39,516 nt of DNA from Octopus sinensis (GCF_006345805.1 NW_021835916.1:1-39516); one strand, 5' to 3'; positions 13,284-39,382 are shown, counted from the stretch's first letter. Notes: generated from the sequence alone by a model not told the origin. Program-made: numbers and translations.

Positions 13284-13312
13284 GTCTGTCTGTCTCTCTA
13301 TCTCTCTCTCTG

Positions 13313-13345
<33 letters not shown>

Positions 13346-13391
13346 TTTCTTCTATCTATCTGTCTGTCTGTTCTCTCTATCTCTCTCTCTG

Positions 13392-13446
<55 letters not shown>

Positions 13447-13476
13447 GTCTGCCTCTCTCTCTCTCTCTGTCTATCC

Positions 13477-13536
<60 letters not shown>

Positions 13537-13633
13537 GTCTGTCTGTCTGTCTCTCTATCTCTCTCTCTGTCTATCTATCTATCTATCTATCTGTCTATCT
13601 ATCTGTCTGTCTGTCTCTCTATCTCTCTCTCTG

Positions 13634-13692
<59 letters not shown>

Positions 13693-13777
13693 GTCTGTCT
13701 GTCTCTCTATCTCTCTCTCTGTCTATCTATCTATCTATCTATCTATGTGTCTATCTATCTGTCTGTCTGTCTCTTTA

Positions 13778-13818
<41 letters not shown>

Positions 13819-13884
13819 GTCTGTCTGTCTCTCTATCTCTCTCTGTGTCTATCTATCTATCTATCTATCTATCTATCAATCTAA
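13135..13884. repeat. Complex (TCTA)n array 4
   Basis: Same higher-order unit. It grades into (AT)n at ~13888. Confidence 0.97.
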
Positions 13885-13887
13885 CTA

Positions 13888-16699: not shown

Positions 16700-16909
16700 G
16701 GTTCTGTTCAGTTGGATATTCAAAACAATCAGAAAAGGACACCATTGCTTGAAGCCGTTTCCCAGGGTCACCTCGGAATGACACACAAGCTTATAGCCCT
16801 GGGTGCAAACATAAATGCTGTTGATGGTGAAGGTAACAGCTGTTTGCACCTGGCCGTGGAAAGAAAAGTGTTTGATTCCAAGGATGCACCCTTGGATTTA
16901 CTAAACGAA
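16700..16909 (+). CDS. Ankyrin-repeat exon (70 aa) of host gene, MIB2-like ankyrin region
   Basis: AG at 16698-16699, GTAAGT at 16910, phase 0/0. Translation GSVQLDIQNNQKRTPLLEAVSQGHLGMTHKLIALGANINAVDGEGNSCLHLAVERKVFDSKDAPLDLLNE contains TPLLEA and SCLHLA ankyrin motifs. Confidence 0.9.
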
Positions 16910-16931
16910 GTAAGTTTTTAAATTGTTTGCG

Positions 16932-18539: not shown

Positions 18540-18711
18540 TGCTGCACTTCCCTTACCTGAAGAGGATGAAATGCTCTCTGGTGTAGTGGTAGGTAGATAT
18601 CTCGCCAGCCAGGGAGCGGACTTTCACCATAAAAACAACAAATATAACACACCATTTGACCTCATTAAGGACCCAAATTTGAGAAAAATTAGAAGCATTT
18701 TTACCACCACA
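18540..18711 (+). CDS. Last ankyrin-region exon of host gene, frameshifted as assembled
   Basis: AG at 18538-18539, GTAAGT at 18712. The core reads EDEMLSGVVVGRYLASQGADFHHKNNKYNTPFDLIKDPNL (ankyrin GAD...N...TP). The flanking exons need phase 0 to 2 (3n+2 nt), but the exon is 172 nt. Confidence 0.75.
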
Positions 18712-21489: not shown

Positions 21490-23264
21490 CAAATATACGA
21501 CGCCATCAATAAAGGGGAAGCATCGTGACACATAATCAACAGGTGTATCGATTGAGGACCCTTATCAGCAGAGTTAGTTATTTGCCGAGGCTTTTTCGAC
21601 AATTTTCAAACAAGATGATGGTCGTGAACCCCCTCCATTTGATAGATGGGTACCTCCAATGCCTAGATTGGTCATCACTCGGGACGAAGTCGAACGCGTT
21701 ATTCAAGGCCTCGATATCAACAAGGGTCACGGCCCTGATGGCATACACCCACAGGTTATCAAAGCGTTGGCTCCGGTCATCTGCCAACCTTTAACACTTC
21801 TATTCAATATGTCATTAGCGACGGGTGTTGTACCTGCGGACTAGAGAACAGCGATAATCTGCCCTATTTTCAAGAAAGGGTGCCGCAAAGACCCACTTAA
21901 CTACCAACCGGTTTCCCTTACTTCAATATTCAGCAAGATATTCGAAACCATCCTTAAGAAAAGTATGTTGCTCCACCTCCAAAACACAGCCTCTATCTCT
22001 GATTCCCAACACGGCTTCGTGCTGAAGAGATCATGCTTGACCAGCTTTCTGGTAATGGAAGAATTGGTGGCGCGTATCCTGGATGATGGTGATGCTGTTG
22101 ACATCGTTTTATTGGACTTTGCCAATGCTTTTGACTCGGTTAACCACCGCCTATTACTTGTCAAGCTTCAAGCATATAGTTTCCATCCGGATATTGTACG
22201 ATGGGTTGGTGCCTTCCTCTCAGATCGCTCCTTCCAAGTCCAATTTAATGGTTCGCGGTCCGACGTCTCCAGTGTGAGCAGTGGCGTGCCTCAATGTTCA
22301 GTGCTTGGGCCGTTATTATTTTTAGTCTTCGTAAATGACTTGCCCGACGACCTCACGCAACACACCCTTCTATTTGCCGACGATGTCAAACTGGTTGCTC
22401 CTCACAGTGATATAGAGGATCTTCGTCGATGCCTCCACCAAGTTCGGAGGTGGTCAAACAAACGGGACCTGTGTCTGAACGTGTCAAAGTGCGGTCATCT
22501 GCCTGTTGGCTCTCCTCCTGCAACTCAACTTGATTTCGAGCCGGGTCGTCTGCTGCTGGAGATGACCGATCAGGTAAAGCACCTGGGTATCTTGGTGGAT
22601 TCCTCCTTTTCGCCTTCGGCCCAGTGCGTCCATGCTGCCAACAAAGCACGCGGAATTCTGTTCTTGATTCAACGGTCATTCGGAATGCTCACAGCAGCCA
22701 TATTCCTACCACTCTATGTCATGCTGGTGAGACCCATATTGGAGTATGGGATTCAAGCCTCTTCTCCTTATCTCCTCAAAGACATACAGCATCTCGAAAG
22801 AGTCCAGAAGCTGGCTACCCGCATGGTTCTTGGTCTTAAGCATTTGTCTTATGAAGAAAGGCTGAAGACGCTCGACCTTTATTCTCTAGAAAAACGACGA
22901 CGCCGTGGTGATCTCATTCTTGCTCACAACATCATAAGCAGAAAGTGTAACCTCTCGAAAGAGCAGTTCTTTACTCCTGCTCCAGAGCGTCGGCTGCGGG
23001 GTCATTCCGAAAAGCTCTATCTACGACAATTTCATCTCAATCGAAGGAGAGGGGCTTTCTCCGTCCGGGTTGCGGGTCCGTGGAATAAGCTGCCGGACGA
23101 CATAGTGAAGATGTCGACGACCACTCGGTTCAAAGTCTCTCTTGACCAGAAATGGTCTGAACTCTTTGTATGACCACCCTCTCTGTACATAACTCCCTAT
23201 CCTCCTACATAACCTTTGAGCCAATAAAAAAAGGAATTGAAAAAAATATTGAATTGAATTGAAT
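21490..23264 (+). mobile_element. 5'-truncated CR1-clade LINE (RT pseudogene)
   Basis: One frame runs 21659-23173 with an in-frame TAG at 21842-21844. Motifs: GPDGIHP, YQPVSLTS, QHGF, LLDFANAFDSVNH, SGVPQCSVLGP, LFADDVKL, HLERVQKLATR. AATAAA at 23223-23228 and an (ATTGA)n tail at 23248-23264. Confidence 0.9.
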
Positions 23265-24151: not shown

Positions 24152-24291
24152 ATGTTTGTGGTGCAGAAATAAAGCGGCCACAACAAAAGTTCATCCATGT
24201 GGACACCTTGTAATATGTAAGGGATGTTCAAACGTTACACTTCAACGATGTTTGAAGTGCGGGAAACCTGTAACGAGCAGAACTGGAGATG
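24152..24291 (+). CDS. C3HC4 RING-finger exon of host gene
   Basis: CAG acceptor (AG 24150-24151), GTAAG donor at 24292, phase 2 to 1. Translation CLWCRNKAATTKVHPCGHLVICKGCSNVTLQRCLKCGKPVTSRTGD fits C-x2-C...PCGH...C-x2-C...C-x2-C. Confidence 0.9.
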
Positions 24292-25443
24292 GTAAGAAAT
24301 CTTGCTGATCTGTCTGTTTGTCCTGCTTGTCCCACTGCCCTTATTGTGTAGAATAATATACTTCATGTTGTTATGTAGGCAGAGGTCTGCCATAATCTGG
24401 CAGATTTATGATAAAAGGTGTTCCTAGTGTCTGTTCTCTGTAATAGTATATCTCTCACACTACATCCACCAAACATTGACCTTATCCAAGTAGGAAACAT
24501 GTCACACTTCAAGAGGGTTGTAGTCTGCAACATAAAAATAATGAAGATTCTGCAAGATAATTAGTGAGTAACTGAAGTATCAATAAATCTCCATCAGCTC
24601 TATAATTATTATGAGTTTTATAAGATAATTATGAGTTATTAGAAGATAATTAAATACAACAGTACTTACAAGGACATCAGTGTCATCTTTGGTAAAGTAT
24701 TAAATTTAGTAGAATATTTTAAAGGAGTAAATTGTATGTGTCACCTGTTTTGAGACTTCAACACGCAACTCCATGTTGCTGTGTTGGTCTTTGGGTGATA
24801 TCAAGGCTAACAGAGACACTGTTTTGTCCGTCTCTCTCAAATTTAGGTTTTGGTTCTGACTTGAGTGTCACATTCCAACCAGATCATGAAACCTTCAAAT
24901 ATATCTTGAATGAGATGACATTCTGGTGAACTGTGAAGTTAAAATTAGGGATTATCAGCAACAATGTTTAACAAAGAGATCAGGTGTATGTTTCTCCTTC
25001 TTGAAGTGGTTGTGACATGTGTTTGTTGTTATATCTTTGATGAATAAATTTGTTGACACTGGAATCAAACAGGTTGTTAGTGAAGATCAGGGTTTTGAAA
25101 AGGCAATAGATTTGGCATAGATATAAGCAGGGAAACCAAAACCTACAGATTAACTGTTATTAGGTGATAATTAAGTGATATAATTACAGCATTGTTAGAT
25201 TATGTAGGATATCTTAACAGAGAGAGGAAATTTACAAAGATCAACTAGAGTTCGTTTTGGAGCTAAATATTGGCTATTACATGGGTCCACTGTTGAAAGT
25301 ATAAAAATATTGACCAAAACAATTATGATCGCCGGTTGGCCATTGATGGTATGAATGTTTCTCATTAATAAAATATAGATTATTAATAAATATAAAGAAC
25401 TTGTGCTATAAATAAATATAAAACTTGGAGACACATATTTCAG

Positions 25444-25494
25444 AGAGTCCAAAGTTTGAAGAGAAGGGAGTGCAGACTGTGGCAGAGACAGTTG
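25444..25494 (+). pseudogene. Cassette-like exon A (51 nt, (E)SPKFEEKGVQTVAETV) lacking a canonical donor
   Basis: The acceptor aaaacttggagacacatatttcag|ag is homologous to exons B-E and the death-domain exon. The donor position reads g|atgagt rather than g|gtgagt. Confidence 0.6.
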
Positions 25495-27170
25495 ATGAGT
25501 TTAAAATAAGAGATCTTAATTAATTTCTATGGATTTTACATTCACCTCAGCTATTTTGCGTATTAGAATGGTGGAGAACAAATCCCATCTCTAATTTCCA
25601 TTTGAAAGGTTAGCTCTAAAGTAATTGTATTAAAAATATTACTGAAATTTCATAAAGTCATGGTTAACGTGTTTGGTAAAATGGATAAATTAAAAGCCAC
25701 AATAGAGTTAATATTGTCTTCTGGAAGATGGAACTATAATTTATTATTTTAGGTGTAAACTCGTGAATTAATAAAATAGTTGTTTGTTTTTCTACTAAGA
25801 TCTTTCGTAAGTTTTCTGATAGGTTATTCTTGATGTTGTTATGTAGCCAGATGTCTGTCGTAATATTTTGTATTTTCTGGGGTTGTGTACCCTGAATGTC
25901 TCTGGTTAGAATACATTTTGTTGTTGCAAATTAGAAAATTCTAATTAAATATTAACTCTGTATAAGAATATTCATCATGAACTTAATTTTATTAAATGTT
26001 AAATTTAGTATTGAACCGTGAATATCTGTTTATATTTAAACAAATTATTGGTGTTTATACAAAATATACGATCAGAAATTGAATATGACTTGAATACACA
26101 AATCCTTCTTTGTAGCTATATATAATATACACTTATTACATTGTTTGAACAACATTTACCATCCATATAGTCATTCTTTTTCTCACTCTTGTTAGATTTT
26201 AGATGATATTAATGCTAAAAGAGGCACAGTTTTCTGAGTGTTTCACCCTTTGGTCTTGATTGTTGCGTTCAAATTATTTAATGAAAGATATCATTGTTAT
26301 TTGACCAGGAAATGAATTAATCATTAGTATTTGGCAGTGGACTTGGTTATATCTTTCTTCGTTTGCTCATGGAACTACCATAATATTAGCTGTGCTGAGA
26401 CACAATCATATTCATTGTAATGAAGGCTATATGTTCTTTACTCAGATTATATACAATCTATATTGATATCTAGTATTGCACCGTCAAGCACAGTGCCATT
26501 GTATCACATATATACCCAATTATCATGATAATTAATAAGCTATAATTCATTAACTCTCTTACATTTGTATGTCTGAAATGTAAACTGATTTTGTCATAGG
26601 AATCCTGTACCCTCACCTTACATGTTATATCTTGTTAGGGATCATGTTGGGGAAGGGTGTATGGAATTTGGCTTGTGGAGATGTTTTTTAGGGGACAGAT
26701 TGTGTGCGGGGTGGGGGGTATGCACATAAAGGACATGTCTTTATGGCGCAGTTTTACTTAATTAGAGAGGAATGTTGATTAGTGAATTCTAGAGATGAGA
26801 GGACTGTGCCATGCCATAGGTTTGGCACAGTTATAAGAAAAGAAAGACAATGCTAAGAGAAAACTGTCATCAAGTGTTAATTAAATGAGATAATTGCAAC
26901 ATTGTTAGAATATTTAATGTGTTTTTAGAGAGAGAGAGAGAGAGGGAGAGGGTGGATTTAGAAATGTTAGTCTGTTTTATTGTGGTCATATTGAGTTATT
27001 ACATGGGACCACTGTAGAAAGTACAGAAATATTGACCAAAACCATAATGGTCAACATTTGACCATTAACGACAGAAATTGAATGTCTCACAATAACAAGA
27101 TAGAGTTTAATATAAATAAAGATGAAGAAAGTTTATTTTTAAATGTAAAACTTGGAAATATTTATTTCAG

Positions 27171-27248
27171 AGGCTCCAAAGTTTGAAGACAGGTGTGTAC
27201 AAATAGAGGCTATATGTCAGGAATTAGGGGCTGCATCTCAGGCAATTG
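27171..27248 (+). CDS. Cassette exon B, 78 nt, phase 1/1 ((E)APKFEDRCVQIEAICQELGAASQAI)
   Basis: tttatttcag| acceptor and |gtgagt donor, with no stop in the frame set by the RING exon. Confidence 0.7.
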
Positions 27249-27498
27249 GTGAGTATAAAATAATAGTTCCCAATTGATTTCTGTAAGGTTTTCTTCCCCC
27301 GAGTATATTGTGCTTGAAAGAATAACTGAAAACAGATTCCATTCCTATTTTCCAATTGAACGATTATCTGTATAATAATTGAATTAAAGATATCGATTTA
27401 CTGAGAGTTTATGAAATACCCATTGAGGTTAATGCTGTTGGTAATAATGTTCAAATTAGAAGACACAATAGAGTTAATTTTGTCATTTGGTCAAGAAC

Positions 27499-28327
27499 TC
27501 ATCATCATCATCATCGTTTAACGTCCGTTTTTATAGTAGCATGGGTCGGACGATTTCACTGGCAAGGCAGTAGGCTGCGTCAGGCTGCAATGTGATCTGG
27601 CAAGGTTTCCACATATGTATGCCATTCCTAACGCCAACCACTCCGAGAGTGTGGTGGGTGCTTTTAACGTGCCACCGACACAGGAGCCAGTCGGGGTGGG
27701 TGCTGGCATCAACCACGTTCGGATGGTGTTTCTTATGTGCCAACGGCACAGGGAACTAGTCAGGCGTCAGTGACAAGGACCTATGCTTCTATGGTACTTA
27801 TAACGTGACACAGGAACAGGTGCCAGCCAGGCGGCACTGGCATCGGTCACAACTACAATTTCCATTTTGATTTCGATTTTAATTTGATTTTGATTTGTGA
27901 TTTCTGGTTTTTGGTTTTACTTGACTCGGAAATTCTTCTCAAGCGCAACTTATCACTCTGTGATTCAAGGGTACTTTTAAAAGGGGCTGGTTATGCGCCA
28001 CTGGTATAGGCTACAGCTGTGATCTCACTTCACTTGCCGAGTCCTCTTAATCACGTCATATTTCCAGAGGTCTCTGTCTCTTGCCATTACCTCTGTGAGG
28101 GCCAACGTTCGAAGGTCGTTTCACCACGTCATGCCTGTCTTCCTGGGTCACCCCTTTCCACGGGTTCCTTCCACTGTTAGGGTGTAACGCTTCTTCCCAC
28201 AGCACTCCTCATCCATACACATGACCATACCAGTGCAATTGTCTCTCTTGTACACCACATCTGATGCTTCTTATGTCTAACACTTCTCTCAGGCCTCTTC
28301 ACTCTGCCTTGTGTGCACACTGACATC
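27499..28327 (-). mobile_element. 5'-truncated RTE-clade LINE in unit 1
   Basis: The minus strand encodes the RTE C-terminus (QERQLHWYGHV at 28218-28250, VEGTRG, DRDLWKY), followed by 3'UTR and a (GAT)n tail, seen as (CAT)n on +. Confidence 0.75.
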
Positions 28328-29004
28328 GTTGCGTTCAAATTATTTAATGGAAGTTAGTCATTGTTATTTGACCAGGAAATGAATTAAGCATTAGTATTTG
28401 ACAGTGGACTTGGTTATATCTTTCTTCGTTTGCTCATGGAACTACCATAATATTAGCTGTGCTGAGACACAATCATATTCATTGTAATGAAGGTTATATG
28501 TTCTTTACTCAGATTATATACAATCTATATTGATATCTAGTATTGCACCGTCAAGCACTGTGCCATTGTATCACATATATACCCAATTATCATGATAATT
28601 AATAAGCTATAATTCATTAACTCTCTTACATTTGTATGTATGAAATGTAAACATATTTTGTCATAGGGACCTTGTGTACCTTCACTTAACATTTTACACC
28701 TTGTTAGGGATTTAGGGATCATGTTGGGGAAGGGTGTATGGAATTTGGCTTGTGGAGATGATTTTTAGGGGACAGATTGTGTGCGGGGTGGGGGGTATGC
28801 ACATAAAGGACATGTCTTTATGGGCGCAGTTTTACTTAATTAGAGAGGAATGTTGATTAGTGAATTCTAGAGATGAGAGGACTGTGCCATGCCATAGATT
28901 TGGCGCAGTTATAAGAAAAGAAAGACAATGCTAAGAGAAAACTCTTATCAAGTGTTAATTAAATGAGATAATTGGTACATTGTTAGAATATTTAATGTGT
29001 TTTT

Positions 29005-29038
<34 letters not shown>

Positions 29039-29257
29039 GGTGGATATAGAAATGTTAGTCTGTTTTATTGTTTCATATTGGGCTATTACATGGGACCACT
29101 GTAGAAAGTACAGAAATATTGACCAAAACCATAATGGTCAACATTTGACCATTAACAACAGAAATTGAATGTCTCACAATAACAAGATAGAGTTTAATAT
29201 AAATAAAGATGAAGAAAGTTTATTTTTAAATGTAAAACTTGGAAATATTTATTTCAG

Positions 29258-29335
29258 AGGCTCCAAAGTTTGAAGACAGGTGTGTACAAACAGAGGCTAC
29301 ATGTCAGGAATTAGGGGCTACATCTCAGGCAATTG
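29258..29335 (+). CDS. Cassette exon C, 78 nt, phase 1/1 ((E)APKFEDRCVQTEATCQELGATSQAI)
   Basis: Canonical AG/GT and an open frame. Confidence 0.7.
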
Positions 29336-29585
29336 GTGAGTATAAAATAATAGTTCCCAATTGATTTCTGTAAGGTTTTCTTCCCCCGAGTATATTGTGC
29401 TCGAAAGAATAACTGAAAACAGATTCCATTCCTATTTTCCAATTGAACGATTATCTGTATAATAATTGAATTAAAGATATCGATTTACTGTGAGTTTATG
29501 AAATACCCATTGAGGTTAATGCTGTTGGTAATAATGTTCAAATTTTAGACACAAAAGAGTTAATTTTGTCATTTGGTCACAGAAC

Positions 29586-30426
29586 TCATCATCATCATCA
29601 TCAACATCACCATCGTTTAACGTCCGTTTTTTATGGTGGCATGGATTGGATGATTTCACTGGCAAGGCAGTAGGCTGCGCCAGGCTCCAATGTGATCTGG
29701 CAAGGTTTCCACATATGTATGCCATTCCTAACGCCAACCACTCCGAGAGTGTGGTGGGTGCTTTTTACGTGCCACCGACACAGGAGCCAGTCGGGGTGGG
29801 TGCTGGCATCAACCACGTTCGGATGGTGTTCTTATGTGCCAACGGCACAGGGAACTAGTCAGGCGGCAGTGACAAGGACCTATGCTTCTATGGTACTTAT
29901 AACGTGACACAGGAACAGGTGCCAGCCAGGCGGCACTGGCATCGGTTACAACTACAATTTCCATTTTGATTTCGATCTTAATTTGATTTTGATTTGTGAT
30001 TTCTGGTTTTTGGTTTTACTTGACTCGGAAATTCTTCTCAAGCGCAACTTATCACTCTGTGATTCAAGGGTACTTTTAAAAAGGGCTGGTTATGCGCCAC
30101 TGGTATATGCTACAGCCATGATCTCACTTCACTTGCCGAGTCCTCTTAATCACGTCATATTTCCAGAGGTCTCTGTCTCTTGCCATTACCTCTGTGAGGG
30201 CCAACGTTCGAAGGTCGTTTCACCACGTCATGCCTGTCTTCCTGGGTCACCCCTTTCCACGGGTTCCTTCCACTGTTAGGGTGTAACGCTTCTTCCCACA
30301 GCACTCCTCATCCATACACATGACCATACCAGTGCAATTGTCTCTCTTGTACACCACATCTGATGCTTCTTATGTCTAACACTTCTCTCAGGCCTCTTCA
30401 CTCTGCCTTGTGTGCACACTGACATC
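29586..30426 (-). mobile_element. RTE fragment in unit 2
   Basis: Duplicate of 27499-28327. Confidence 0.75.
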
Positions 30427-31095
30427 GTTGCATTCAAATTATTTAATGGAAGTTAGTCATTGTTATTTGACCGGGAAATGAATTAGTCATTAGTATTTGG
30501 CAGTGGACTTGGTTATATCTTTCTTCGTTTGCTCATGGAACTACCATAATATTAGCTGTGCTGAGACACAATCATATTCATAGTAATGAAGGCTATATGT
30601 TCTTTACTCAGATTATATACAATCTATATTGATATCTAGTATTGCACCGTCAAGCACTGTGCCATTGTATCACATATATACCCAATTATCATGATAATTA
30701 ATAAGCTATAATTCATTAACTCTCTTACATTTGTATGTCTGAAATGTAAACTGATTTTGTCATAGGGACCTCGTGTACCCTCACCTAACATTTTACACCT
30801 TGTTAGGGATCATGTTGGGGAAGGGTGTATGGAATTTGGTTTGTGGAGATGATTTTTAGGGGACAGATTGTGTGCGGGGTGGGGGGTATGCACATAAAGG
30901 ACATGTCTTTATGGGCTCAGTTTTACTTAATTAGAGAGGAATGTTGATTAGTGAATTCTAGAGATGAGAGGACTGTGCCATGCCATAGATTTGGCACAGT
31001 TATAAGAAAAGAAAGACAAAGCTAAGAGAAAACTGTCATCAAGTGTTAATTAAATGAGATAATTGCAACATTGTTAGAATATTTAATGTGTTTTT

Positions 31096-31129
<34 letters not shown>

Positions 31130-31349
31130 GGTGGATATAAGAATGTTAGTCTGTTTTATTGTGGACATATTGGGCTATTACATGGGACCACTGTAGAAAG
31201 TACAGAAATATTGACCAAAACCATAATGGTCAACATTTGACCATTAACAACAGAAATTGAATGTCTCACAATAACAAGATAGAGTTTAATAAAAATAAAG
31301 ATGAAGAAAGTTTATTTTTAAATGTAAAACTTGGAAATATTTATTTCAG

Positions 31350-31427
31350 AGGCTCCAAAGTTTGAAGACAGGTGTGTACAAACAGAGGCTACATGTCAGG
31401 AATTAGGGGCTACATCTCAGGCAATTG
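31350..31427 (+). CDS. Cassette exon D, 78 nt, phase 1/1, same peptide as exon C
   Basis: Canonical AG/GT and an open frame. Confidence 0.7.
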
Positions 31428-31678
31428 GTGAGTATAAAATAATAGTTCCCAATTGATTTCTGTAAGGTTTTCTTCCCCCGAGTATATTGTGCTCGAAAGA
31501 ATAACTGAAAACAGATTCCATTCCTATTTTCCAATTGAACGATTATCTGTATAATAATTGAATTAAAGATATCGATTTACTGTGAGTTTATGAAATACCC
31601 ATTGAGGTTAATGCTGTTGGTAATAATGTTCAAATTTTAAGACACAAAAGAGTTAATTTTGTCATTTGGTCACAGAAC

Positions 31679-32520
31679 TCATCATCATCATCATCAACAT
31701 CACCATCGTTTAACGTCCGTTTTTTATGGTGGCATGGATTGGATGATTTCACTGGCAAGGCAGTAGGCTGCGCCAGGCTCCAATGTGATCTGGCAAGGTT
31801 TCCACATATGTATGCCATTCCTAACGCCAACCACTCCGAGAGTGTGGTGGGTGCTTTTTACGTGCCACCGACACAGGAGCCAGTCGGGGTGGGTGCTGGC
31901 ATCAACCACGTTCGGATGGTGTTTCTTATGTGCCAACGGCACAGGGAACTAGTCAGGCGGCAGTGACAAGGACCTATGCTTCTATGGTACTTATAACGTG
32001 ACACAGGAACAGGTGCCAGCCAGGCGGCACTGGCATCGGTTACAACTACAATTTCCATTTTGATTTCGATCTTAATTTGATTTTGATTTGTGATTTCTGG
32101 TTTTTGGTTTTACTTGACTCGGAAATTCTTCTCAAGCGCAACTTATCACTCTGTGATTCAAGGGTACTTTTAAAAAGGGCTGGTTATGCGCCACTGGTAT
32201 ATGCTACAGCCATGATCTCACTTCACTTGCCGAGTCCTCTTAATCACGTCATATTTCCAGAGGTCTCTGTCTCTTGCCATTACCTCTGTGAGGGCCAACG
32301 TTCGAAGGTCGTTTCACCACGTCATGCCTGTCTTCCTGGGTCACCCCTTTCCACGGGTTCCTTCCACTGTTAGGGTGTAACGCTTCTTCCCACAGCACTC
32401 CTCATCCATACACATGACCATACCAGTGCAATTGTCTCTCTTGTACACCACATCTGATGCTTCTTATGTCTAACACTTCTCTCAGGCCTCTTCACTCTGC
32501 CTTGTGTGCACACTGACATC
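31679..32520 (-). mobile_element. RTE fragment in unit 3
   Basis: Duplicate of 27499-28327. Confidence 0.75.
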
Positions 32521-33186
32521 GTTGCATTCAAATTATTTAATGGAAGTTAGTCATTGTTATTTGACCGGGAAATGAATTAGTCATTAGTATTTGGCAGTGG
32601 ACTTGGTTATATCTTTCTTCGTTTGCTCATGGAACTACCATAATATTAGCTGTGCTGAGACACAATCATATTCATAGTAATGAAGGCTATATGTTCTTTA
32701 CTCAGATTATATACAATCTATATTGATATCTAGTATTGCACCGTCAAGCACTGTGCCATTGTATCACATATATACCCAATTATCATGATAATTAATAAGC
32801 TATAATTCATTAACTCTCTTACATTTGTATGTCTGAAATGTAAACTGATTTTGTCATAGGGACCTCGTGTACCCTCACCTAACATTTTACACCTTGTTAG
32901 GGATCATGTTGGGGAAGGGTGTATGGAATTTGGCTTGTGGAGATGATTTTTAGGGGACAGATTGTGTGCGGGGTGGGGGGTATGCACGTAAAGGACATGT
33001 CTTTATGGGCTCAGTTTTACTTAATTAGAGAGGAATGTTGATTAGTGAATTCTAGAGATGAGAGGACTGTGCCATGCCATAGATTTGGCGCAGTTATAAG
33101 AAAAGAAAGACAATGCTAAGAGAAAACTGTTATCAAGTGTTAATTAAATGAGATAATTGCAACATTGTTAGAATATTTAATGTTTT

Positions 33187-33225
<39 letters not shown>

Positions 33226-33444
33226 GGTGGATATAGAAATGTTAGTCTGTTTTATTGTTTCATATTGGGCTATTACATGGGACCACTGTAGAAAGTACAG
33301 AAATATTGACCAAAACCATAATGGTCAACATTTGACCATTAACAACAGAAATTGAATGTCTCACAATAACAAGATAGAGTTTAATATAAATAAAGATGAA
33401 GAAAGTTTATTTTTAAATGTAAAACTTGGAAATATTTATTTCAG

Positions 33445-33522
33445 GGGCTCCAAATTGTGAGGACAGGTGTGTACAAACAGAGGCTACATGTCAGGAATTA
33501 GGGGCTACATCTCAGGCAATTG
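33445..33522 (+). CDS. Cassette exon E, 78 nt, phase 1/1 ((G)APNCEDRCVQTEATCQELGATSQAI)
   Basis: Canonical AG/GT and an open frame. Confidence 0.7.
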
Positions 33523-33772
33523 GTGAGTATAAAATAATAGTTCCCAATTGATTTCTGTAAGGTTACTTCCCCCGAGTATATTGTGCTCGAAAGAATAACT
33601 GAAAACAGCTTCCATTCCTATTTTCCAATTGAACGATTATCTCTATAATAATTGTATTAAAGATATCGATTTACTGTGAGTTTATGAAATACCCATTGAG
33701 GTTAATGCTGTTGGTAATAATGTTCAAATTAGAAGACACAATAGAGTTAATTTTGTCATTTGGTCACAGAAC

Positions 33773-34597
33773 TCATCATCATCATCATCATCATCATCAT
33801 TTAACATCCGTTTCTTATGGTGGCATGGGTCGGACGATTTCACTGGCAAGGCAGTAGGCTGCGTCAGGCTGCAATGTGATCTGGCAAGGTTTCCACATAT
33901 GTATGCTATTCCTAACGACAACCACTTCGAGAGTGTGGTGGGTGCCTTTTACGTGCCACCGACACAGGAGCCAGTTGAAGTTGGGGCTGGCATTGTCCAC
34001 GTTCGGAAGGTACTTTTTATGTGCCAACGGCACAGGGAACCAGTCAGGCGGCACTGGCAACAAACAATGTTTGAATGGTACTTATTATGTGCCAGCCAGG
34101 CGGCACTGGCATTGGCCATAATTACAATTTGCATTTTGATTTCGATCTTGATTTGATTTTGATTTGTGATTTCTGGTTTTTGGTTTTACTTGACTCGGAA
34201 ATTCTTCTCAAGCGCAACTTATCACTCTGTGATTCAAGGGTACTTTTAAAAGGGGCTGGTTATGCGCCACTGGTATAGGCTACAGCTGTGATCTCACTTC
34301 ACTTGCCGAGTCCTCTTAATCACATCATATTTACAGTGGTCTCTGTCTCTTGCCATTACCTCTGTGAGGCCCAACGTTCGAAGGTCGTTTCACCACGTCA
34401 TCCCCTGTCTTCCTGGGTCACCCCTTTGCACGGGTTCTTTCCACTGTGAGGGTGTAACACTTCTTCCCACAATTCTCCTCATCCATACCCATAACCATAC
34501 CAGTGCAGTTGTCTCTCTTGTACACCACATCTGATGCTTCTTATGTCTAACACTTCTCTCAGGCCTCTTCACTCTGCCTTGTGTACACACTGACATC
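33773..34597 (-). mobile_element. RTE fragment in unit 4 (more diverged)
   Basis: Homologous to the RTE fragments of units 1-3, with private variants. Confidence 0.75.
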
Positions 34598-35694
34598 GTT
34601 GCGTTCAAATTATTTAATAGAATATAGTCATTGTTATTTGACCGGGAAATGAATTAGTCATTAGTATTTGGCAGTGGACTTGGTTATATCTTTCTTCGTT
34701 TGCTCATGGAACTACCATAATATTAGCTGTGCTGAGACACAATCATATTCATTGTAATGAAGGTTATATGTTCTTTACTCAGATTATATACAATCTATAT
34801 TGATATCTAATAATGACCGAGAACAGGTTCCAATGCTAGATTTCATTTGAATGCTTAGCTATAAAGAAATTCTGTTCTTCTACAACAACACAAATATCCA
34901 ATAAATGTACTTTATGCAAACATCAGTTACTCATTCACTCGCAGAAAGAAAGATACAAAAATTAAATATAAACCCTGAAACGGTTCTCTCCCGTTAAGGA
35001 GAATATTCGCCCTGTTTGTCATCTCATTGTACTCATTCATTCTCTCTCTCTCACTCATGCTCTTTCTCTCCGTCTTTTCAAGAAAGATGCTGGTTAAAAG
35101 TTTCAATACAATAAATGATATCATCCTCATCCTTTCTCATCTGCTCTCCATGCTCCCATACACTAGGTGGGTCATCACTGTCCAAGTCAGTTGTATCTGA
35201 AATTACTGCCAACCGTCATTTGTTGAGGAAAACATCTCACTTAAACATTGCAGCTTTTCTAAGGTGGTAGACCCTTTCTAACCCCAACCACTTTATAAAA
35301 GGTCCTGGGTATATTTTATTGTCGCACAAGCATTAGAAATGATCATCAATTTCCCAACAATATCAAACGTTCCTTTCAAACTTGTGGTGTCATCTTTCCT
35401 AGTTTCCACCAACCACTTCCTAGTGTGTTCTGGGAGCATTTAATTATAGCACAAGTAGTAATCAAGTTGTGCTACATTCTATATAATTAGACGGTCCTCA
35501 CTACTCTATGATGTTTTGTTTCACTGAAGCTGATGACATTTTCAGGAGGTGAGAAGGGAATGTGATGACAAAAGAATCAGGATGCGGGGAGAGAAATTTG
35601 CAATACCCCCTCTCCCGGCTGTGGGGTCTTTGTCTTACATGTCTTTTGGCTAAATATTCCAGTACTTGTGCGTTACACAAAGGGGCCACGTACA

Positions 35695-35859
35695 CTCTGT
35701 GAGGTGGTTGGCATCAATAAGAACATCCTACCGTAGAAAACCATGCCAAAGAAACCATCTGGGGCCTGGTGCAGTTGTCTGGCTTGTCAGATCCTGTCAA
35801 GATTTCCAACCCATTCCAGCATGGAAAACAAACTTTGAATGTTGATGATGATGATGATG
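35695..35859 (+). mobile_element. RTE-related 3' end with (GAT)n tail
   Basis: gtgaggtggttggc...ccaacccattccagcatggaaaac...gatgatgatg is a diverged forward-orientation homolog of the tails in the tandem units. Confidence 0.6.
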
Positions 35860-36760
35860 TCTTCCAGTAACTCATCATAATTCTTTGTCTTAGATTGTTA
35901 CAGTAGTTTCCTGTCTGGTATAACATATTAGCTCAGTATAATAATATCGATTGTGGAAACCGATTCAGTGATTTTGATAACATTCATATTGAACAGAGAA
36001 CATATGTTCACATTTGAACAAAACATTGATGCTAACATATGCAATACATGGAAAGGAATGAACGTAAGAGATTCCTGTGTGACTTGAACTCACAACTCTT
36101 TTCTAACTATATATATATAATTATCGCTTGTTACGATGTTTCAATAACGTTTACTGTCCATATAGACATCGTTATACTGACAATTGTTGGCTTTGAGATG
36201 GTTTCAATTGTAAGAGAGTCACTGTTTTCAGTCTTTCACATTTTGGTTTTACTTCCGACTTGATTGTTATGTTGAAATTAGATCATGGAACCTGGTCATT
36301 GTTATTTGACCAAGAAAAGAATTCATCATTAGTATTCGGTACTGGAAATGGTTACATTTTTCTATGGTTTCTCATGGAACTGCCATCATATCAACTGTGC
36401 TGAGACACAACCATATTCATTGTAACAAATGTCACATGTTCTTCACACAGATTTTATACAATCTATATTGATAGTTAGTGTTTAAACGCCGCATTAACAT
36501 GATAATTAATCAGCTATCATTCATTAACTCTCTTAAACTTGTCTGTCTGGAAGTTTCATAGCATTATCTTGTACCCTCATCTGATATTTTACACCTTGTT
36601 ACCCTCAAAGTTAACATAACTTTTATATGGGTACACAACCACATCCCTACGAACTAGTTTTTACAGATGTATGCCCTTCCCACAATAATAAAGTGTTGAT
36701 TATCAATAACTATAATGAAATTATACTATAAAACGTAAAACTTGAAAATATTCATTTCAA

Positions 36761-36808
36761 ACACTCCAACGTCTGTGAAGGATGCCTTGACAACATCACA
36801 GCCAGTTT
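36761..36808 (+). pseudogene. Cassette-like exon F (48 nt, TPTSVKDALTTSQPV) lacking a canonical acceptor
   Basis: The context aaaacttgaaaatattcatttcaa| is homologous to the other acceptors but ends AA, not AG. A GTGAGA donor lies at 36809. The upstream intron from ~36290 is homologous to the tandem units. Confidence 0.5.
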
Positions 36809-37569
36809 GTGAGAAGCAAATAACAGTACCTCATGGATTTCTATATTTTTAACCTTCACCTGAGCATTTGTAGTTTATCAGAATGACTGAGGACAAGATC
36901 CATTCCTAATTTACATCTGAAATTTTAGCTGTATAATAATTCTATTAGACATTTTGATATCAATGGAATTTCACAAAATATCCAACGGGGTTGGCATGGT
37001 TCGGAAAATGGATAATTTAGAAGACAATAGAATTAATACTGTATTTTGAAACGGAGGACTAAAATATGTAGTTACTAAGTTTACTGATAGGTTATTGCTG
37101 TTGTTGCTATTTAGGCAAATGTCTCTCATAATATGACAGATTTACAATGAAATGTGTTCCGTATGTGAACACCCTGCCTTTTGTTCTCACTGATAATAAA
37201 TTTATCATTACATCCCCTAACATTGTCTTTATCCATGTAAAAGCATTAGGTTTGATGTTGAGACAACTGTTCTCTCTCTCCTCTCTCTCCAAGATAGACA
37301 CTGATGACCCTCATCATTTATCATCTGATGTCTATGCTCCTATCGATTGGATGGATGATTCCTATCCATGTCAGTTCTTATTAACAAATACTGTCCGCCT
37401 TGATTGGATGAGGAACACATTCCGGCTTTTCTATGGTGATGTGCCTTTCCTAACATCAACCACTTTAAAAAGGGCCTTGGGCACAATTTTGCTCCAAAAG
37501 CCCTAGAAAAATGATCATGTCGTCAACAAAATTAAACGCTCCTCTTTAACTTCTACAAGGAAATTCTGT

Positions 37570-38260
37570 TTGCAGATACTGAGAACAGAAAGCTAAAATA
37601 CAATAAAGATGAACTGGATGGATATATGCAGGAGATCCAAAGCAAAAGCAATGATTCCCATTCATAGACAGTTTGAAATGTCCATTGAAACCAGCAATCA
37701 AATACCGATTGATTAGTTCAGACTAATTTCAACCTTGAATATTGATGGCAAGATTTATAAGGTTGTATTCACAAAGAGATCAACTGTAAATCTACAGAAT
37801 AATGAATATGGGACTAAAAGTATCTTGAAGACTGGAATCCTCTGGCATTCCAGGCTGTGTGGAACATGTGTCTTAAATCTAGGATGTGATACAAGACGGA
37901 AAGAAGAATAAAAGGGATTGAATGTTGTGTGATTTGATCTGGTTTATGGTTCTCTAGCAAACAAATTGTTGATGGAAGCAGTGGACCTGTTTTATATATG
38001 AGAAAAGATTAAGGATCTGATGAGGAGCTGCTATAACAATTTCAATATGCAGTTCTTGAGGAAAACTTTCTCGGTAGACTGGTATCATTTTGAAGCGGGA
38101 ATTGCTGTAGTTTCTACAAAATCAGTCATTTGGTTTGTGATTTTTATGGAGATGTTACTTAAATCAGCAGATTGATAAGAAATGGCTCAAAGGAAAACAC
38201 TGGAGAAGACATTAATGGATTACATGACAATAGTAACAACAAATAAAAGGATATGCAAAT
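37570..38260 (+). mobile_element. Highly decayed RT remnant, probably R4/NeSL/CRE-like non-LTR element
   Basis: FRLISTLNIDGKIY (37718-37759), SGIPGCVEH (37841-37867) and NVV*FDL..YGS resemble the FRPISLLN.EGK, G.PGC.EH and VVWLDL..AYGS motifs. The boundaries are approximate. Confidence 0.5.
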
Positions 38261-39310
38261 AGTTCTGGATTAACTGAGTAGACTGAGGAACTTGGTGAAG
38301 AATGTGGTTCAATGCAAATGGGTAATGCAGCCCGTCATTTGTGAAAGGTCAGCAGAAACAAGTGAAGGTCAAAATAGCAGGAGAAACCCTGATGAAGTTT
38401 AAAGGGAAACTTGAAAAACTATTACGACGATGGTAAACTACCTAATTTTGCAATAAGAGTAAAGGCATTGAGATCAAGTCACAGAACGAAGATGGTTAAA
38501 AGAAACAAATATGCCAAACATTCTGGAAAATAAAAGATTTGGAGCTCGCACTTTGTATTCCCGTCTTTCTTATATATTTTTGAGTATCAGTCCTTTTGTA
38601 CCATTTCAGATGTCTTCACTGCAATAATGTGTAGATGTCCAGTTGTATGTAGTGAATGGGGTTTTGTACAAGTGTGCAGTGTTTTAGGACACCTGATATC
38701 ACTTTTTGTTTCATCTGTGGAGAACTGATCATTGCTCACCTGTATTAAGGAGTCTTAAAATATTCCCTGCACCAGATAATGACCAGGTGAACTGGCATGT
38801 GGGATGATAAAATTCAAGATTTCCAACAGCAAAGAGAACAGGTATTACGTTTATTTTACTTGAAGTGGTGTGTCATGCAATTCTGACGAGATCTTTGGAG
38901 ACCACATTGGATGATATTGGACTTTAGCAGAAGATGAGGAGAATGGTGGTTAGTGAAGTGTAGAGTTCAGAGGACAGTCACATGTCATAGATTTGGTACA
39001 GATATATGAAAGGAGAGAGAGAACTATGAAATGATAATTGAATGAAATAATTGCAACATTGTTAGATTATGTAGGATGTCTCTGTTAAAGAGAAACAAGG
39101 TTTCGGAAAGTTAGTCTATTTTGTTGCGGGCCTAAATATTGAGCTATTACCTGGTCCCACAATGGAAAGTATAAAAATACTGAGCAAAACCCTAGTGGTT
39201 ACCAGCCAACCACTGATGATAACAATGTCCCACAACAATAAACTACAGAATATTTATAGAGATAAATAAGTTTTACAATAAATTATAAAAGCTGGAAATA
39301 TTTATTTCAG

Positions 39311-39382
39311 AGAGTCCAGTTCTGAAGGAGAAAGATCTTCTGAGAGTGGCTAAGAGGTTAGGACGTGATTGGTGGCAAATAG
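39311..39382 (+). CDS. Probable first death-domain exon, 72 nt, phase 1/1 ((E)SPVLKEKDLLRVAKRLGRDWWQI(G))
   Basis: tttatttcag| acceptor, |gtgagt donor, and in frame with the RING exon. The pattern L..vAk.LG.dW..iG matches death-domain helices 1-2. Only 24 codons are visible. Confidence 0.6.

What the first reader, a model, noticed from the sequence alone, without database searches (positions are those of the whole stretch)
25444..39382. Array of duplicated, frame-preserving mini-exons between RING and death domain
Seen: seven homologous intron-exon modules share the acceptor context aaaa(ct/gc)tggaaatatttatttcag and a downstream gtgagtat-like donor. They are A 25444, B 27171, C 29258, D 31350, E 33445, F 36761 and the death exon 39311. 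All are multiples of 3 (51, 78 x4, 48, 72 nt) in phase 1/1, matching the RING exon's phase-1 end, so any subset can be spliced in without a frameshift. Upstream intron blocks are also shared (ttgttagattatgtaggat near 25192 and 39059), and A and the death exon both begin agagtcca. Inference: repeated duplication of the death-exon module built an expandable, possibly alternatively spliced linker, in at least two age layers. No supplied ORF reveals these exons.
Basis: partly seen in the sequence, partly recalled or inferred. Interest (0 to 1): 0.85.

Follow-up and report, generated by a model that had tools for sequence, protein, structure and literature searches.

The report
Duplicated mini-exon linker in octopus gene
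An octopus gene for an ankyrin–RING–death-domain protein carries a real tandem array of duplicated, frame-preserving mini-exons between its RING and death domain. This is a known way of building a variable-length, alternatively spliced linker, sister-genome annotations already model it, and this copy of the gene looks broken upstream.

Summary
The window is octopus DNA. A RING exon (24152-24291, ends in phase 1) is followed by seven homologous intron-exon modules.

B, C, D and E (78 nt each) sit in a 2.09-kb tandem repeat (26259-34819; units 95-99% identical). They have canonical AG/GT sites and only the phase-1 frame is open. The seventh module is the first exon of a death domain.

Modules A and F are relics. 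A has an AT donor and F has an AA acceptor. These defects are shared with related loci, and neither module appears in any gene model seen.

NCBI gene models in Octopus sinensis, O. vulgaris and O. bimaculoides ("MIB1/MIB2-like") carry 0-4 or more such units between RING and death domain. Their isoforms differ only there, and one gene has at least 22 isoforms.

Unit number ranges from 1 to 4 or more among seven loci. The B array is 90-98% identical between paralogs whose ANK/RING or death parts are only about 67-80% identical, so the loci are mosaics.

B exons evolve almost neutrally (dN/dS about 0.8; exon diversity equals intron diversity). AlphaFold2 models the repeat region as disordered.

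The window's own copy has two 2-nt deletions in the ankyrin exon upstream, so it is a probable pseudogene.

Verdict: a real feature and a new member of a known kind (comparable to titin PEVK exons). Moderate interest.

The parts
16700..16915 (+). Ankyrin-repeat coding exon (GSVQLDIQNNQKRTPLLEAV...DLLNE); reading frame intact
   Evidence: tblastn of family proteins gives 90-92% identity. Translation shown. Pfam Ank_4/Ank/Ank_5 pass their thresholds.
18540..18711 (+). Second ankyrin-region exon, disrupted by two 2-nt deletions relative to intact paralogs: one after 18555, the other an A5 run at 18684-18688 where the paralogs have A7. Reading from the acceptor hits TGA after 6 codons.
   Evidence: Three-frame translations and the alignment with L001 and L004.
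24152..24291 (+). RING (C3HC4) exon. Starts after a phase-2 intron and ends in phase 1.
   Evidence: RING regular expression matched. Sequence shown. Pfam zf-C3HC4_3 scores 34.8 bits against a cut-off of 27. Its amino-acid sequence is identical to the RING stretch of O. sinensis P0002.
25444..25494 (+). Module A: relic 51-nt mini-exon of the 17-aa type. The AG acceptor is present but the donor is AT. Not splice-competent in frame.
   Evidence: the same AT is present in L001 and L004. A is absent from the gene models P0003 and P0023. It is homologous to units that are used in other paralogs, such as ARPIFEDKVVQTVEEPR in P0014 and P0017.
26259..34819 (+). Tandem repeat of 4.1 copies of a ~2.09-kb unit. 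Each unit holds old intron sequence, a 78-nt exon, and a ~0.8-kb transposon-like insert with a (CAT)n end.
   Evidence: Self-BLAST. Unit-by-unit identity is 95.2-98.8%. Sequence shown.
27171..27248 (+). Mini-exon B, 78 nt, phase 1-1, canonical AG/GT; encodes (E)APKFEDRCVQIEAICQELGAASQAI
   Evidence: Matches the 26-aa units of Octopus gene models at 84-97% identity.
29258..29335 (+). Mini-exon C, 78 nt, phase 1-1, canonical AG/GT; encodes (E)APKFEDRCVQTEATCQELGATSQAI
31350..31427 (+). Mini-exon D, 78 nt, identical in exon sequence to C
33445..33522 (+). Mini-exon E, 78 nt, phase 1-1, canonical AG/GT; encodes (G)APNCEDRCVQTEATCQELGATSQAI
36761..36808 (+). Module F: relic 48-nt mini-exon. AA stands where the AG acceptor should be; the GT donor is present.
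   Evidence: the AA at the homologous acceptor position is shared by L001, L005 and L006. F is not included in the models P0003, P0019 or P0005.
39311..39382 (+). First exon of the death domain (helix 1 region; (E)SPVLKEKDLLRVAKRLGRDWWQI), phase 1-1. The last coding exon lies beyond the window end, 1.57 kb downstream in L001.
   Evidence: It is 100% identical to P0003 and P0007. The family death-domain profile matches the RIPK1 death domain at E=4e-10 starting at profile position 3. Pfam Death passes in the paralogs P0006 and P0023.

Best explanation
The region is the 3' half of a member of an Octopus-specific gene family. The family encodes ankyrin repeats, one C3HC4 RING, a variable linker and a C-terminal death domain. 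NCBI names its members 'MIB1/MIB2-like'.

The linker is encoded by cassette mini-exons. They arose by repeated tandem duplication of an intron-exon-intron module containing the first death-domain exon. Every copy keeps phase 1-1, so any number of intact units can lie between the RING exon (phase-1 end) and death exon 1 without a frameshift.

The window shows an old layer of modules: A, the B progenitor, F and the death module. A and F have since lost a splice site. A transposon-like element then inserted downstream of B. The resulting 2.09-kb unit was amplified to four copies (B-E), probably by unequal crossing-over.

The same B array is exchanged between paralogs, or carried along when they recombine. 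This produces mosaic genes with 1 to 4 or more units.

The units most likely encode a disordered spacer. Its length is set by unit number in the genome and by exon skipping in the transcript, and it sets the reach between the E3 RING and the death-domain docking module.

Shown: homology, phases, splice sites, the two age layers, copy-number differences, mosaicism, and annotated isoforms in paralogs. Inferred: the mechanism of amplification, the spacer function, and actual splicing at this locus. This locus is probably a recently inactivated copy.
For: Module homology and tandem structure.

Phases, open frames and splice sites.

Family architecture: 33 of 33 hits in the first search are Octopus ANK-RING-(26-aa units)-death proteins. 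In the exhaustive search, the hits whose source was looked up are Octopus apart from one Gadus protein.

Cassette use in gene models:
- P0002, P0009, P0011 and P0016, all from one O. sinensis contig, contain all three units or a single different unit.
- P0001, P0004, P0010 and P0017 contain 4, 3 or 2 units, or one 26-aa unit plus one 17-aa unit.
- Eight isoforms of one O. sinensis gene, out of at least 22 annotated, differ only between RING and death domain, and one of them skips every unit.
- O. bimaculoides isoforms differ by whole 17/18-aa units.

Domain identities: death-domain profile against RIPK1, ankyrin, PIDD and FADD death domains, E from 4e-10 to 1e-3. Pfam Death passes in P0006 and P0023. 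The window's RING exon passes Pfam.

Copy number: 4, 4, at least 4, 4 plus a fragment, 1, 2 and 3 units in seven loci.

Mosaicism: the B array is 89-94% identical to the window in L002, L003 and L004. In L002 and L004 the death-containing 3' parts are only 67-70% identical, and in L003 the ANK/RING 5' part is only 70-80% identical. L005 shares its 3' part with the window at 98.3%, while its ANK/RING part is 70-80% identical. Units from different loci intermix in a neighbour-joining tree.

Disorder: AlphaFold2 gives pLDDT 22-27 with no secondary structure over the four units. The ankyrin part scores 70-90 and the death domain 79-88.
Against: No RNA evidence for this locus could be examined. The support is from automated gene models of paralogs and orthologs. 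That such isoform models normally rest on RNA-seq is my own knowledge, not something tested here.

B exons show no constraint beyond their introns. Nucleotide diversity is 0.055 in the exon against 0.056 in the upstream 300 nt and 0.03-0.07 in the downstream intron. dN/dS is about 0.8, with 14 nonsynonymous and 4 synonymous variants. So sequence-specific function is not demonstrated.

The window's ankyrin exon 2 has two frameshifting deletions. The collinear O. sinensis locus has a 1-nt deletion in its RING exon. This lineage may therefore be a pseudogene.

The disorder call rests on a shallow 25-sequence alignment and an overall mean pLDDT of 58.
Confidence: 0.72

Rival explanations
1. Neutral by-product. 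The B-E array is a 2.09-kb intronic macrosatellite that happens to carry a duplicated exon. Inclusion of the units is tolerated splicing noise with no function, and at this locus the whole gene is a decaying pseudogene.
For: Exon diversity equals intron diversity. dN/dS is about 0.8. There are two frameshifts in exon 2 of the window and a RING frameshift in L001. One unit in L003 has lost a base at its donor. Modules A and F show that units do decay.
Against: Canonical splice sites and the open frame are kept in 16 of the 17 B-type units examined across five loci, and in the five further units read in L005 and L006.

Among the old module types, splice-proximal intron sequence is better conserved than the exon bodies: 70-87% over the last 30 nt before the exon, against 39-63% for the exons.

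Mini-exon linkers of different unit types persist in many paralogs and in O. bimaculoides, and gene models include them.
Confidence: 0.2
2. Valency model. Each unit is a short linear binding motif, for example an acidic xPxFEDxxVQT core, or the TCQE tetrapeptide that fits the (P/S/A/T)x(Q/E)E consensus of TRAF-binding sites, which I recall from memory. Unit number would then tune how many partners the E3 recruits, rather than its length.
For: The core PxFE(D/E)(K/R)xVQT recurs in all unit types across paralogs and species, although the rest of the unit varies. The region is predicted to be disordered, as regions rich in linear motifs usually are.
Against: No partner is known and the motif assignment is from memory and untested. 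Within B units the variable positions fall in the N-terminal PKFE part. The 17-aa units lack the TCQE element.
Confidence: 0.12
3. Mutually exclusive homologous exons, as in Dscam. One unit, or death exon 1 itself, would be chosen per transcript through competing RNA structures, each unit supplying an alternative first helix for the death domain.
For: The units are homologous to death exon 1 and share its phases, so a unit spliced directly to the last exon would stay in frame.
Against: Gene models contain 0 to 4 or more units together, and the full-length models that reach the C terminus also include death exon 1.

There is no significant complementarity between the conserved upstream and downstream intron flanks (duplex z-scores from -1.8 to +1.8).
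Confidence: 0.03
4. Assembly artefact. The four units are an erroneous expansion of one or two real copies.
For: None beyond the general risk that high-identity tandem repeats are misassembled.
Against: The units differ by 1.2-4.8%. An independent O. sinensis assembly has 4 units at the collinear locus with different unit sequences. Five other loci in two species have 1 to 4 or more units.
Confidence: 0.02

Closest known systems
Titin PEVK exon array (vertebrate TTN)
   Same: Many short exons of about 26-28 codons, produced by tandem duplication and all frame-compatible. They encode a disordered segment whose length is set by differential exon skipping. Blocks of exons have been re-duplicated recently, with transposable elements at or in the repeat units, and the arrays expand and contract between species (PMC6469411). 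That PEVK exons are frame-compatible is from my own knowledge.
   Different: Here the array has 1-7 units rather than more than 100. It lies between a RING and a death domain in a small signalling-type protein, not in a muscle spring. The unit derives from part of a folded domain (death-domain exon 1). The array is also shared and exchanged among many paralogs.
Tandem exon duplication with alternative splicing, the general class including mutually exclusive exon clusters such as Dscam (review PMC9013439, seen)
   Same: Homologous neighbouring exons with homologous flanking introns, and alternative use in transcripts.
   Different: Usage in the gene models is additive (cassette exons, 0 to n units), not one-of-n. 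No competing RNA structure was detected.
Mind bomb E3 ligases MIB1/MIB2, the name NCBI gives these proteins
   Same: Ankyrin repeats followed by a C3HC4_3-type RING. The best structural match of the ankyrin part is the ANK repeat of MIB1 (8v0e, 30% identity).
   Different: No MIB/HERC2, ZZ or REP domains were found by Pfam in any family member examined. There is a single RING. There is a C-terminal death domain, which MIB proteins lack. So the family resembles only the ANK-RING part and is not an ortholog.
Death domains of RIPK1, ankyrin-1/2/3, PIDD, CRADD and FADD
   Same: The C-terminal ~85 residues match these solved death domains by profile (E from 4e-10 to 1e-3) and are modelled as a confident helical domain.
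   Different: The combination with ANK and RING and a mini-exon linker was found only in the genus Octopus. Binding partners are unknown.

Membership tests
Death domain superfamily (Pfam PF00531) | Sequence match to the death-domain profile over the whole ~85-residue domain | tested here: met
   P0006 scores 36.7 bits and P0023 27.7 bits against a cut-off of 22.6. The closest relatives of the window, P0001 and P0007, are below the cut-off (19.5 and 14.8 bits) but align over profile positions 3-80 of 86. The family profile A4 matches the RIPK1 death domain at E=4e-10. The window itself holds only the first 24 residues (39311-39382).
Death domain superfamily (Pfam PF00531) | Six-helix bundle fold | tested here: inconclusive
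   The AlphaFold2 model of P0001 has four DSSP helices over residues 275-357 (one long helix spans 275-296) with pLDDT 79-88. The Foldseek search of the whole model returned only ankyrin matches. The domain was not searched on its own.
RING finger, C3HC4_3 type (PF13920) | C3HC4 cysteine/histidine pattern and a profile match above the cut-off | tested here: met
   The pattern was found at 24153-24290. The window exon scores 34.8 bits against a cut-off of 27.
Mind bomb (MIB1/MIB2) E3 ligases | N-terminal MIB/HERC2 and ZZ domains, plus two or three C-terminal RINGs (defining features as I recall them) | tested here: not met
   Pfam hits for all returned family proteins are only Ank families, one RING and Death. 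No upstream exon with such domains is present in the window.
Tandemly duplicated cassette-exon array (titin PEVK-like) | Neighbouring exons that are homologous together with their flanking introns | tested here: met
   flanking introns are 64-75% identical among the old modules, and whole units are 95-99% identical among B-E.
Tandemly duplicated cassette-exon array (titin PEVK-like) | All units have the same symmetrical phase and a length divisible by 3 | tested here: met
   Lengths are 51, 78 (four times), 48 and 72 nt, all phase 1-1 and matching the phase-1 end of the RING exon.
Tandemly duplicated cassette-exon array (titin PEVK-like) | Units are variably included in transcripts | not testable with these tools
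   No RNA data were available. There is indirect support from NCBI isoform models of paralogs and orthologs that differ only by whole units. Nothing is known for the window's own locus.
Tandemly duplicated cassette-exon array (titin PEVK-like) | The encoded segment is an unstructured spacer | tested here: inconclusive
   pLDDT is 22-27 with no secondary structure over the four units of P0001, but the alignment is shallow. There is no Pfam family for the unit.
Mutually exclusive exon cluster (Dscam-like) | Exactly one exon of the cluster per transcript, enforced by competing RNA pairings | tested here: not met
   Gene models contain 0 to 4 or more units together. Flank-to-flank duplex energies are no better than those of shuffled sequences.

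The most novel reading that the evidence does not exclude
The mini-exon arrays may be a diversification device for an Octopus-specific set of death-fold signalling E3 ligases. Three things would combine to generate a large repertoire of adaptor variants: rapid gain and loss of units, exchange of whole arrays between paralogs with different ANK/RING and death-domain halves, and combinatorial cassette splicing (at least 22 isoforms in one gene). The system would be functionally comparable to other invertebrate immune-diversity systems. The hypervariable first six codons of each unit would be the selected part.
Probability: 0.1. Interest if true: 0.7.

Novelty: new member of a known kind. Interest (0 to 1): 0.38.

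Why it matters
The locus is a clean, datable example of how symmetrical (1-1) exon duplication builds an expandable protein linker out of a piece of a folded domain. It also shows how such an array becomes a recombination substrate that shuffles N-terminal (ANK-RING) and C-terminal (death domain) halves among paralogs.

The ANK-RING-linker-death family appears confined to the genus Octopus in the databases searched. I found no paper describing it. It could matter for cephalopod innate-immune or cell-death signalling.

For genome annotation, the result flags two things. The 'MIB1/MIB2-like' names are misleading. Prokaryote-style ORF lists miss these genes entirely.

Tried and rejected
- Exact-protein look-ups for P0002, P0009, P0007 and P0001 found no locus. 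As a result, the paralog whose RING is identical to the window's, and which has isoforms X1/X6/X7/X8, could not be examined at the DNA level.
- Foldseek of the whole P0001 model returned only ankyrin matches, none at E below 1e-3. It says nothing about the death domain or the linker.
- I tested for RNA pairing between the conserved upstream and downstream intron flanks as a possible splicing-control structure. It was not significant. An earlier, larger version of the script timed out.
- tRNA scan for a SINE head in the unit's transposon-like insert: nothing found. The inverted-repeat scan found only one pair of (CAT)n-tailed element ends.
- Pfam on four concatenated units gave only sub-threshold chance hits.
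- Literature searches for an existing description of the family or of cephalopod exon arrays found none.
- The hypothesis that exon sequence is under purifying selection was rejected for the B units.
- One-to-one orthology of units between the window and L001 was rejected.
- The species of the window could not be fixed. It is 93-97% identical to an O. sinensis locus and up to 98.3% identical to part of an O. vulgaris locus, and identical to neither.

Full report
**What the window is.** The sequence is eukaryotic. It is AT-rich and full of microsatellites and LINE reverse-transcriptase fragments. Protein searches place it in the genus Octopus.

On the + strand I mapped five kinds of coding feature:
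- an ankyrin exon at 16700-16915;
- a second ankyrin-region exon at 18540-18711;
- a C3HC4 RING exon at 24152-24291, which scores 34.8 bits against Pfam zf-C3HC4_3 (cut-off 27);
- four 78-nt mini-exons;
- the first exon of a death domain at 39311-39382.

In the collinear O. sinensis locus L001 the last coding exon lies 1.57 kb beyond death exon 1. That places it just outside the window.

**Check of the observation.** Their lengths (51, 78 x4, 48, 72 nt) are correct and each is open in phase 1. For B-E, phase 1 is the only open frame. The RING exon ends ...GAT G|gt, which is phase 1.

The shared acceptor context occurs 6 times against 0 in 100 shuffles. The shared upstream block occurs 6 times against 0.05 expected.

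Self-BLAST shows that 26259-34819 is 4.1 copies of a ~2.09-kb unit. It also shows that the A, F and death modules are homologous to the B module across 370-690 bp of intron plus exon, at 64-70% identity with E values from 1e-28 to 1e-51.

Two corrections are needed:
- Module A has AT where the donor GT should be.
- Module F has AA where the acceptor AG should be.

Both defects recur in related loci. The A defect is in L001 and L004. The AA at the F acceptor position is in L001, L005 and L006. Neither module appears in the gene models of those loci. No alternative nearby splice site keeps the frame. A and F are therefore relic pseudo-exons.

**Anatomy and history.** The old modules (A, B type, F, death) are 64-75% identical in their flanking introns but only 39-63% identical in their exon bodies. 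The 30 nt before each exon are the best conserved part, at 70-87%.

The B-type exon (78 nt) keeps the ...ELG...QAI end of death exon 1 (...RLG...WQI). The 17-aa types (A, F) lack about 27 nt in the middle. The death domain is an ancient fold, so the direction of descent is from death exon 1 to the mini-exons.

One paralog, P0049, even carries a degenerate 24-aa copy of death exon 1 just before the real one.

Each B-E unit contains a ~0.8-kb GC-richer, transposon-like insert beginning with (CAT)n, for example 27506-28324. The older modules lack it. The order of events was therefore old duplications, then the insertion, then fourfold amplification. B-E are 95.2-98.8% identical, with C and D the closest pair.

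**What the units are in the gene family.** The hypothetical spliced product retrieved 33 proteins, all from O. sinensis or O. vulgaris. They are named 'E3 ubiquitin-protein ligase MIB1/MIB2-like' and have the architecture ANK, RING, n copies of APKFEDRCVQTEATCQELGAASQAI, then a death-like C-terminus.

Isoforms from one 46.6-kb O. sinensis contig have a RING identical to the window's. They contain either all three units (P0002) or a single unit, a different one in each of P0009, P0011 and P0016. Isoforms of another gene contain 4, 3 or 2 units, or one 26-aa unit plus one 17-aa unit.

An exhaustive profile-free search with P0006, followed by name look-ups, showed more:
- The family also exists in O. 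bimaculoides.
- Many paralogs have arrays of other 17-aa units, for example VCPKSEDKAVQAVVESV (about five related copies) and VNRTFEVKETQTLAEPV (three copies).
- Among the hits whose source was looked up, all were Octopus except one cod protein with several death domains.

Eight isoforms of one O. sinensis gene, out of at least 22 annotated, are identical except between the RING and the death domain. One of them skips every unit. O. bimaculoides isoforms differ by whole 17/18-aa units.

To my knowledge such NCBI isoform models are normally built from RNA-seq alignments. I could not inspect that evidence.

**Domain identities.** A profile of the family's C-termini matches solved death domains: RIPK1 at 4e-10, ankyrin-3 at 4e-9, PIDD at 4e-8, and also CRADD, FAS and FADD. 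The alignment starts at profile position 3, so the exon at 39311 encodes the first helix region.

Pfam Death passes its cut-off in P0006 and P0023. It falls below the cut-off in the window's closest relatives.

The proteins are not Mind bomb orthologs. No MIB/HERC2 or ZZ domain is found, there is only one RING, and there is a death domain.

**Comparison of loci.** Six related loci were fetched: L001-L004 from O. sinensis and L005-L006 from O. vulgaris.

| Locus | B-type units |
|---|---|
| window | 4 |
| L001 | 4 |
| L002 | at least 4 (contig starts inside the array) |
| L003 | 4 plus a fragment |
| L004 | 1 |
| L005 | 2 |
| L006 | 3 |

The loci are mosaics:
- L001 is collinear with the window at 93-97% identity.
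- L004 matches the window at about 90-92% from the ankyrin exons through the first B unit, then drops to about 67%.
- L002 and L003 share only the B array with the window, at 89-94%. Their other parts are 68-80% identical.
- L005 shares the segment from F to death exon 1 at 98.3%, but its ANK/RING part is 70-80% identical.
- L006 shares 11.3 kb (array through death exon 1) at 94.8% and has a different RING.

In a neighbour-joining tree of 16 B modules, units from different loci intermix. The window's units are not one-to-one with those of L001.

The array with its homologous introns therefore behaves as a substrate for unequal crossing-over or gene conversion, both within and between paralogs. 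That exchange shuffles N-terminal and C-terminal halves of the genes.

**Selection and structure.** Among 16 B modules, nucleotide diversity is 0.055 in the exon. It is 0.056 in the 300 nt upstream and 0.03-0.07 downstream.

Among 13 distinct exon sequences, dN/dS is about 0.8. There are 14 nonsynonymous and 4 synonymous variants, concentrated in the first six codons (E/G, P/T, K/N, F/C/S). There is thus no detectable purifying selection on the unit's sequence.

What is kept is the frame and the splice sites, in 16 of the 17 B-type units examined in five loci. The exception is one L003 unit that has lost a base at its donor.

AlphaFold2 on P0001 with a 25-sequence alignment gave three results:
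- a confident ankyrin domain;
- a confident helical death domain, with pLDDT 79-88;
- pLDDT 22-27 with no secondary structure across all four units.

Together these results favour a disordered spacer in which length matters more than sequence. They are also compatible with neutral, tolerated inclusion of the units.

**State of this particular copy.** The window's second ankyrin exon has two separate 2-nt deletions relative to L001 and L004. One lies after 18555. The other is an A5 run at 18684-18688 where the paralogs have A7. Reading from the acceptor reaches a TGA after six codons, and the three parts of the exon are in three different frames.

Unless both are assembly errors, this copy is a recently inactivated pseudogene. 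Its RING exon, B-E and death exon 1 are still intact.

The collinear O. sinensis locus has a different lesion, a 1-nt deletion in the RING exon. Its RING exon also differs from the window's at about 17% of positions, within flanks that differ by only about 4%. That pattern suggests conversion from another paralog.

**Mechanism proposed.** The steps below are marked as shown or inferred.
1. Tandem duplication of a phase 1-1 module taken from the start of the death domain created cassette exons. Homology and phases are shown; the direction of descent is inferred.
2. Unequal crossing-over between the homologous introns expands, contracts and exchanges the arrays. Copy-number differences and mosaicism are shown; the mechanism is inferred.
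3. The spliceosome includes a variable number of intact units. This is annotated in paralogs and not shown for this locus.
4. The resulting disordered linker sets the spacing, or the motif valency, between a RING E3 module and a death-domain docking module. The protein presumably acts in a death-fold signalling complex. This step is inferred.

**Comparison with known systems and novelty.** The closest analogue is the titin PEVK region. It consists of short, tandemly duplicated, differentially spliced exons that encode a disordered segment, with recent block duplications associated with transposable elements (PMC6469411).

The array is not a mutually exclusive exon cluster. Gene models combine units, and no competing RNA pairing was detected.

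Four literature searches found no description of this Octopus family or of its exon arrays. The gene models themselves are public. I therefore rate it a new member of a known kind.

It is of moderate interest as a well-resolved case of exon-duplication-driven linker evolution and paralog mosaicism in a lineage-specific death-domain E3 family. The main caveat is that the copy in this window is probably dead.

Noticed in passing
window 18540-18711: The ankyrin exon upstream of the RING exon carries two separate 2-nt deletions relative to L001 and L004: one after 18555, and an A5 run at 18684-18688 instead of A7. They put a stop codon six codons into the exon. This copy is either a probable pseudogene or a low-quality stretch of assembly.
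   Followed up: yes
window 24152-24291 versus L001 14480-14620: The RING exon differs from the collinear O. sinensis locus at about 17% of positions, clustered in its second half, while the flanking intron differs by only about 4%. L001 also has a 1-nt deletion there. Each version matches a different set of paralogs, which suggests gene conversion between paralogs.
   Followed up: partly
window 27506-28324, 29590-30420, 31690-32515, 33775-34595: Every 2.09-kb unit holds a ~0.8-kb GC-richer, transposon-like insert that starts with a (CAT)n run, as expected for the (ATG)n tail of an element on the minus strand. A related element end in the opposite orientation lies at 35805-35859. No tRNA-like head was detected.
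   Followed up: partly
window 4952-5833, 9754-12039, 21965-23173 (+): LINE-type retrotransposon fragments lie upstream of the mapped exons and in the introns. Reverse-transcriptase (RVT_1) matches cover 9754-10955 and 21965-23173, and a zf-RVT match covers 11293-12039. The two copies at about 4.5-5.8 kb and 10.8-12.0 kb have near-identical ORF translations.
   Followed up: partly
window 329-2700, 3876-4507, 12467-13887: There are very long microsatellites: (GAT)n of about 2.4 kb (791 copies) and (TCTA)n/(TATC)n arrays of 0.6 and 1.4 kb. Similar arrays flank paralogous loci, for example in L003 and L004.
   Followed up: no
L003 and the proteins P0008, P0012, P0013, P0018: Several NCBI gene models end by reading into the intron after a B unit or after death exon 1 (...SQAIGEYKIIVPN*, ...WWQIGEYI*). 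These could be intron-retention isoforms or truncated models.
   Followed up: no
L005 24612-24662: An A-type 51-nt unit (ARPIFEDKEVQTVEEPR) in this O. vulgaris locus has CT in place of the GT donor. The homologous unit is included in the gene models of another paralog (P0014, P0017). Different paralogs have thus lost different units.
   Followed up: partly
Proteins P0001-P0040 (NCBI names): Automated names for members of this one family vary widely: MIB1-like, MIB2-like, ankyrin-1, ankyrin-3-like, RIPK1, PIDD1-like and 26S proteasome subunit 10. None reflects the shared ANK-RING-linker-death architecture.
   Followed up: partly
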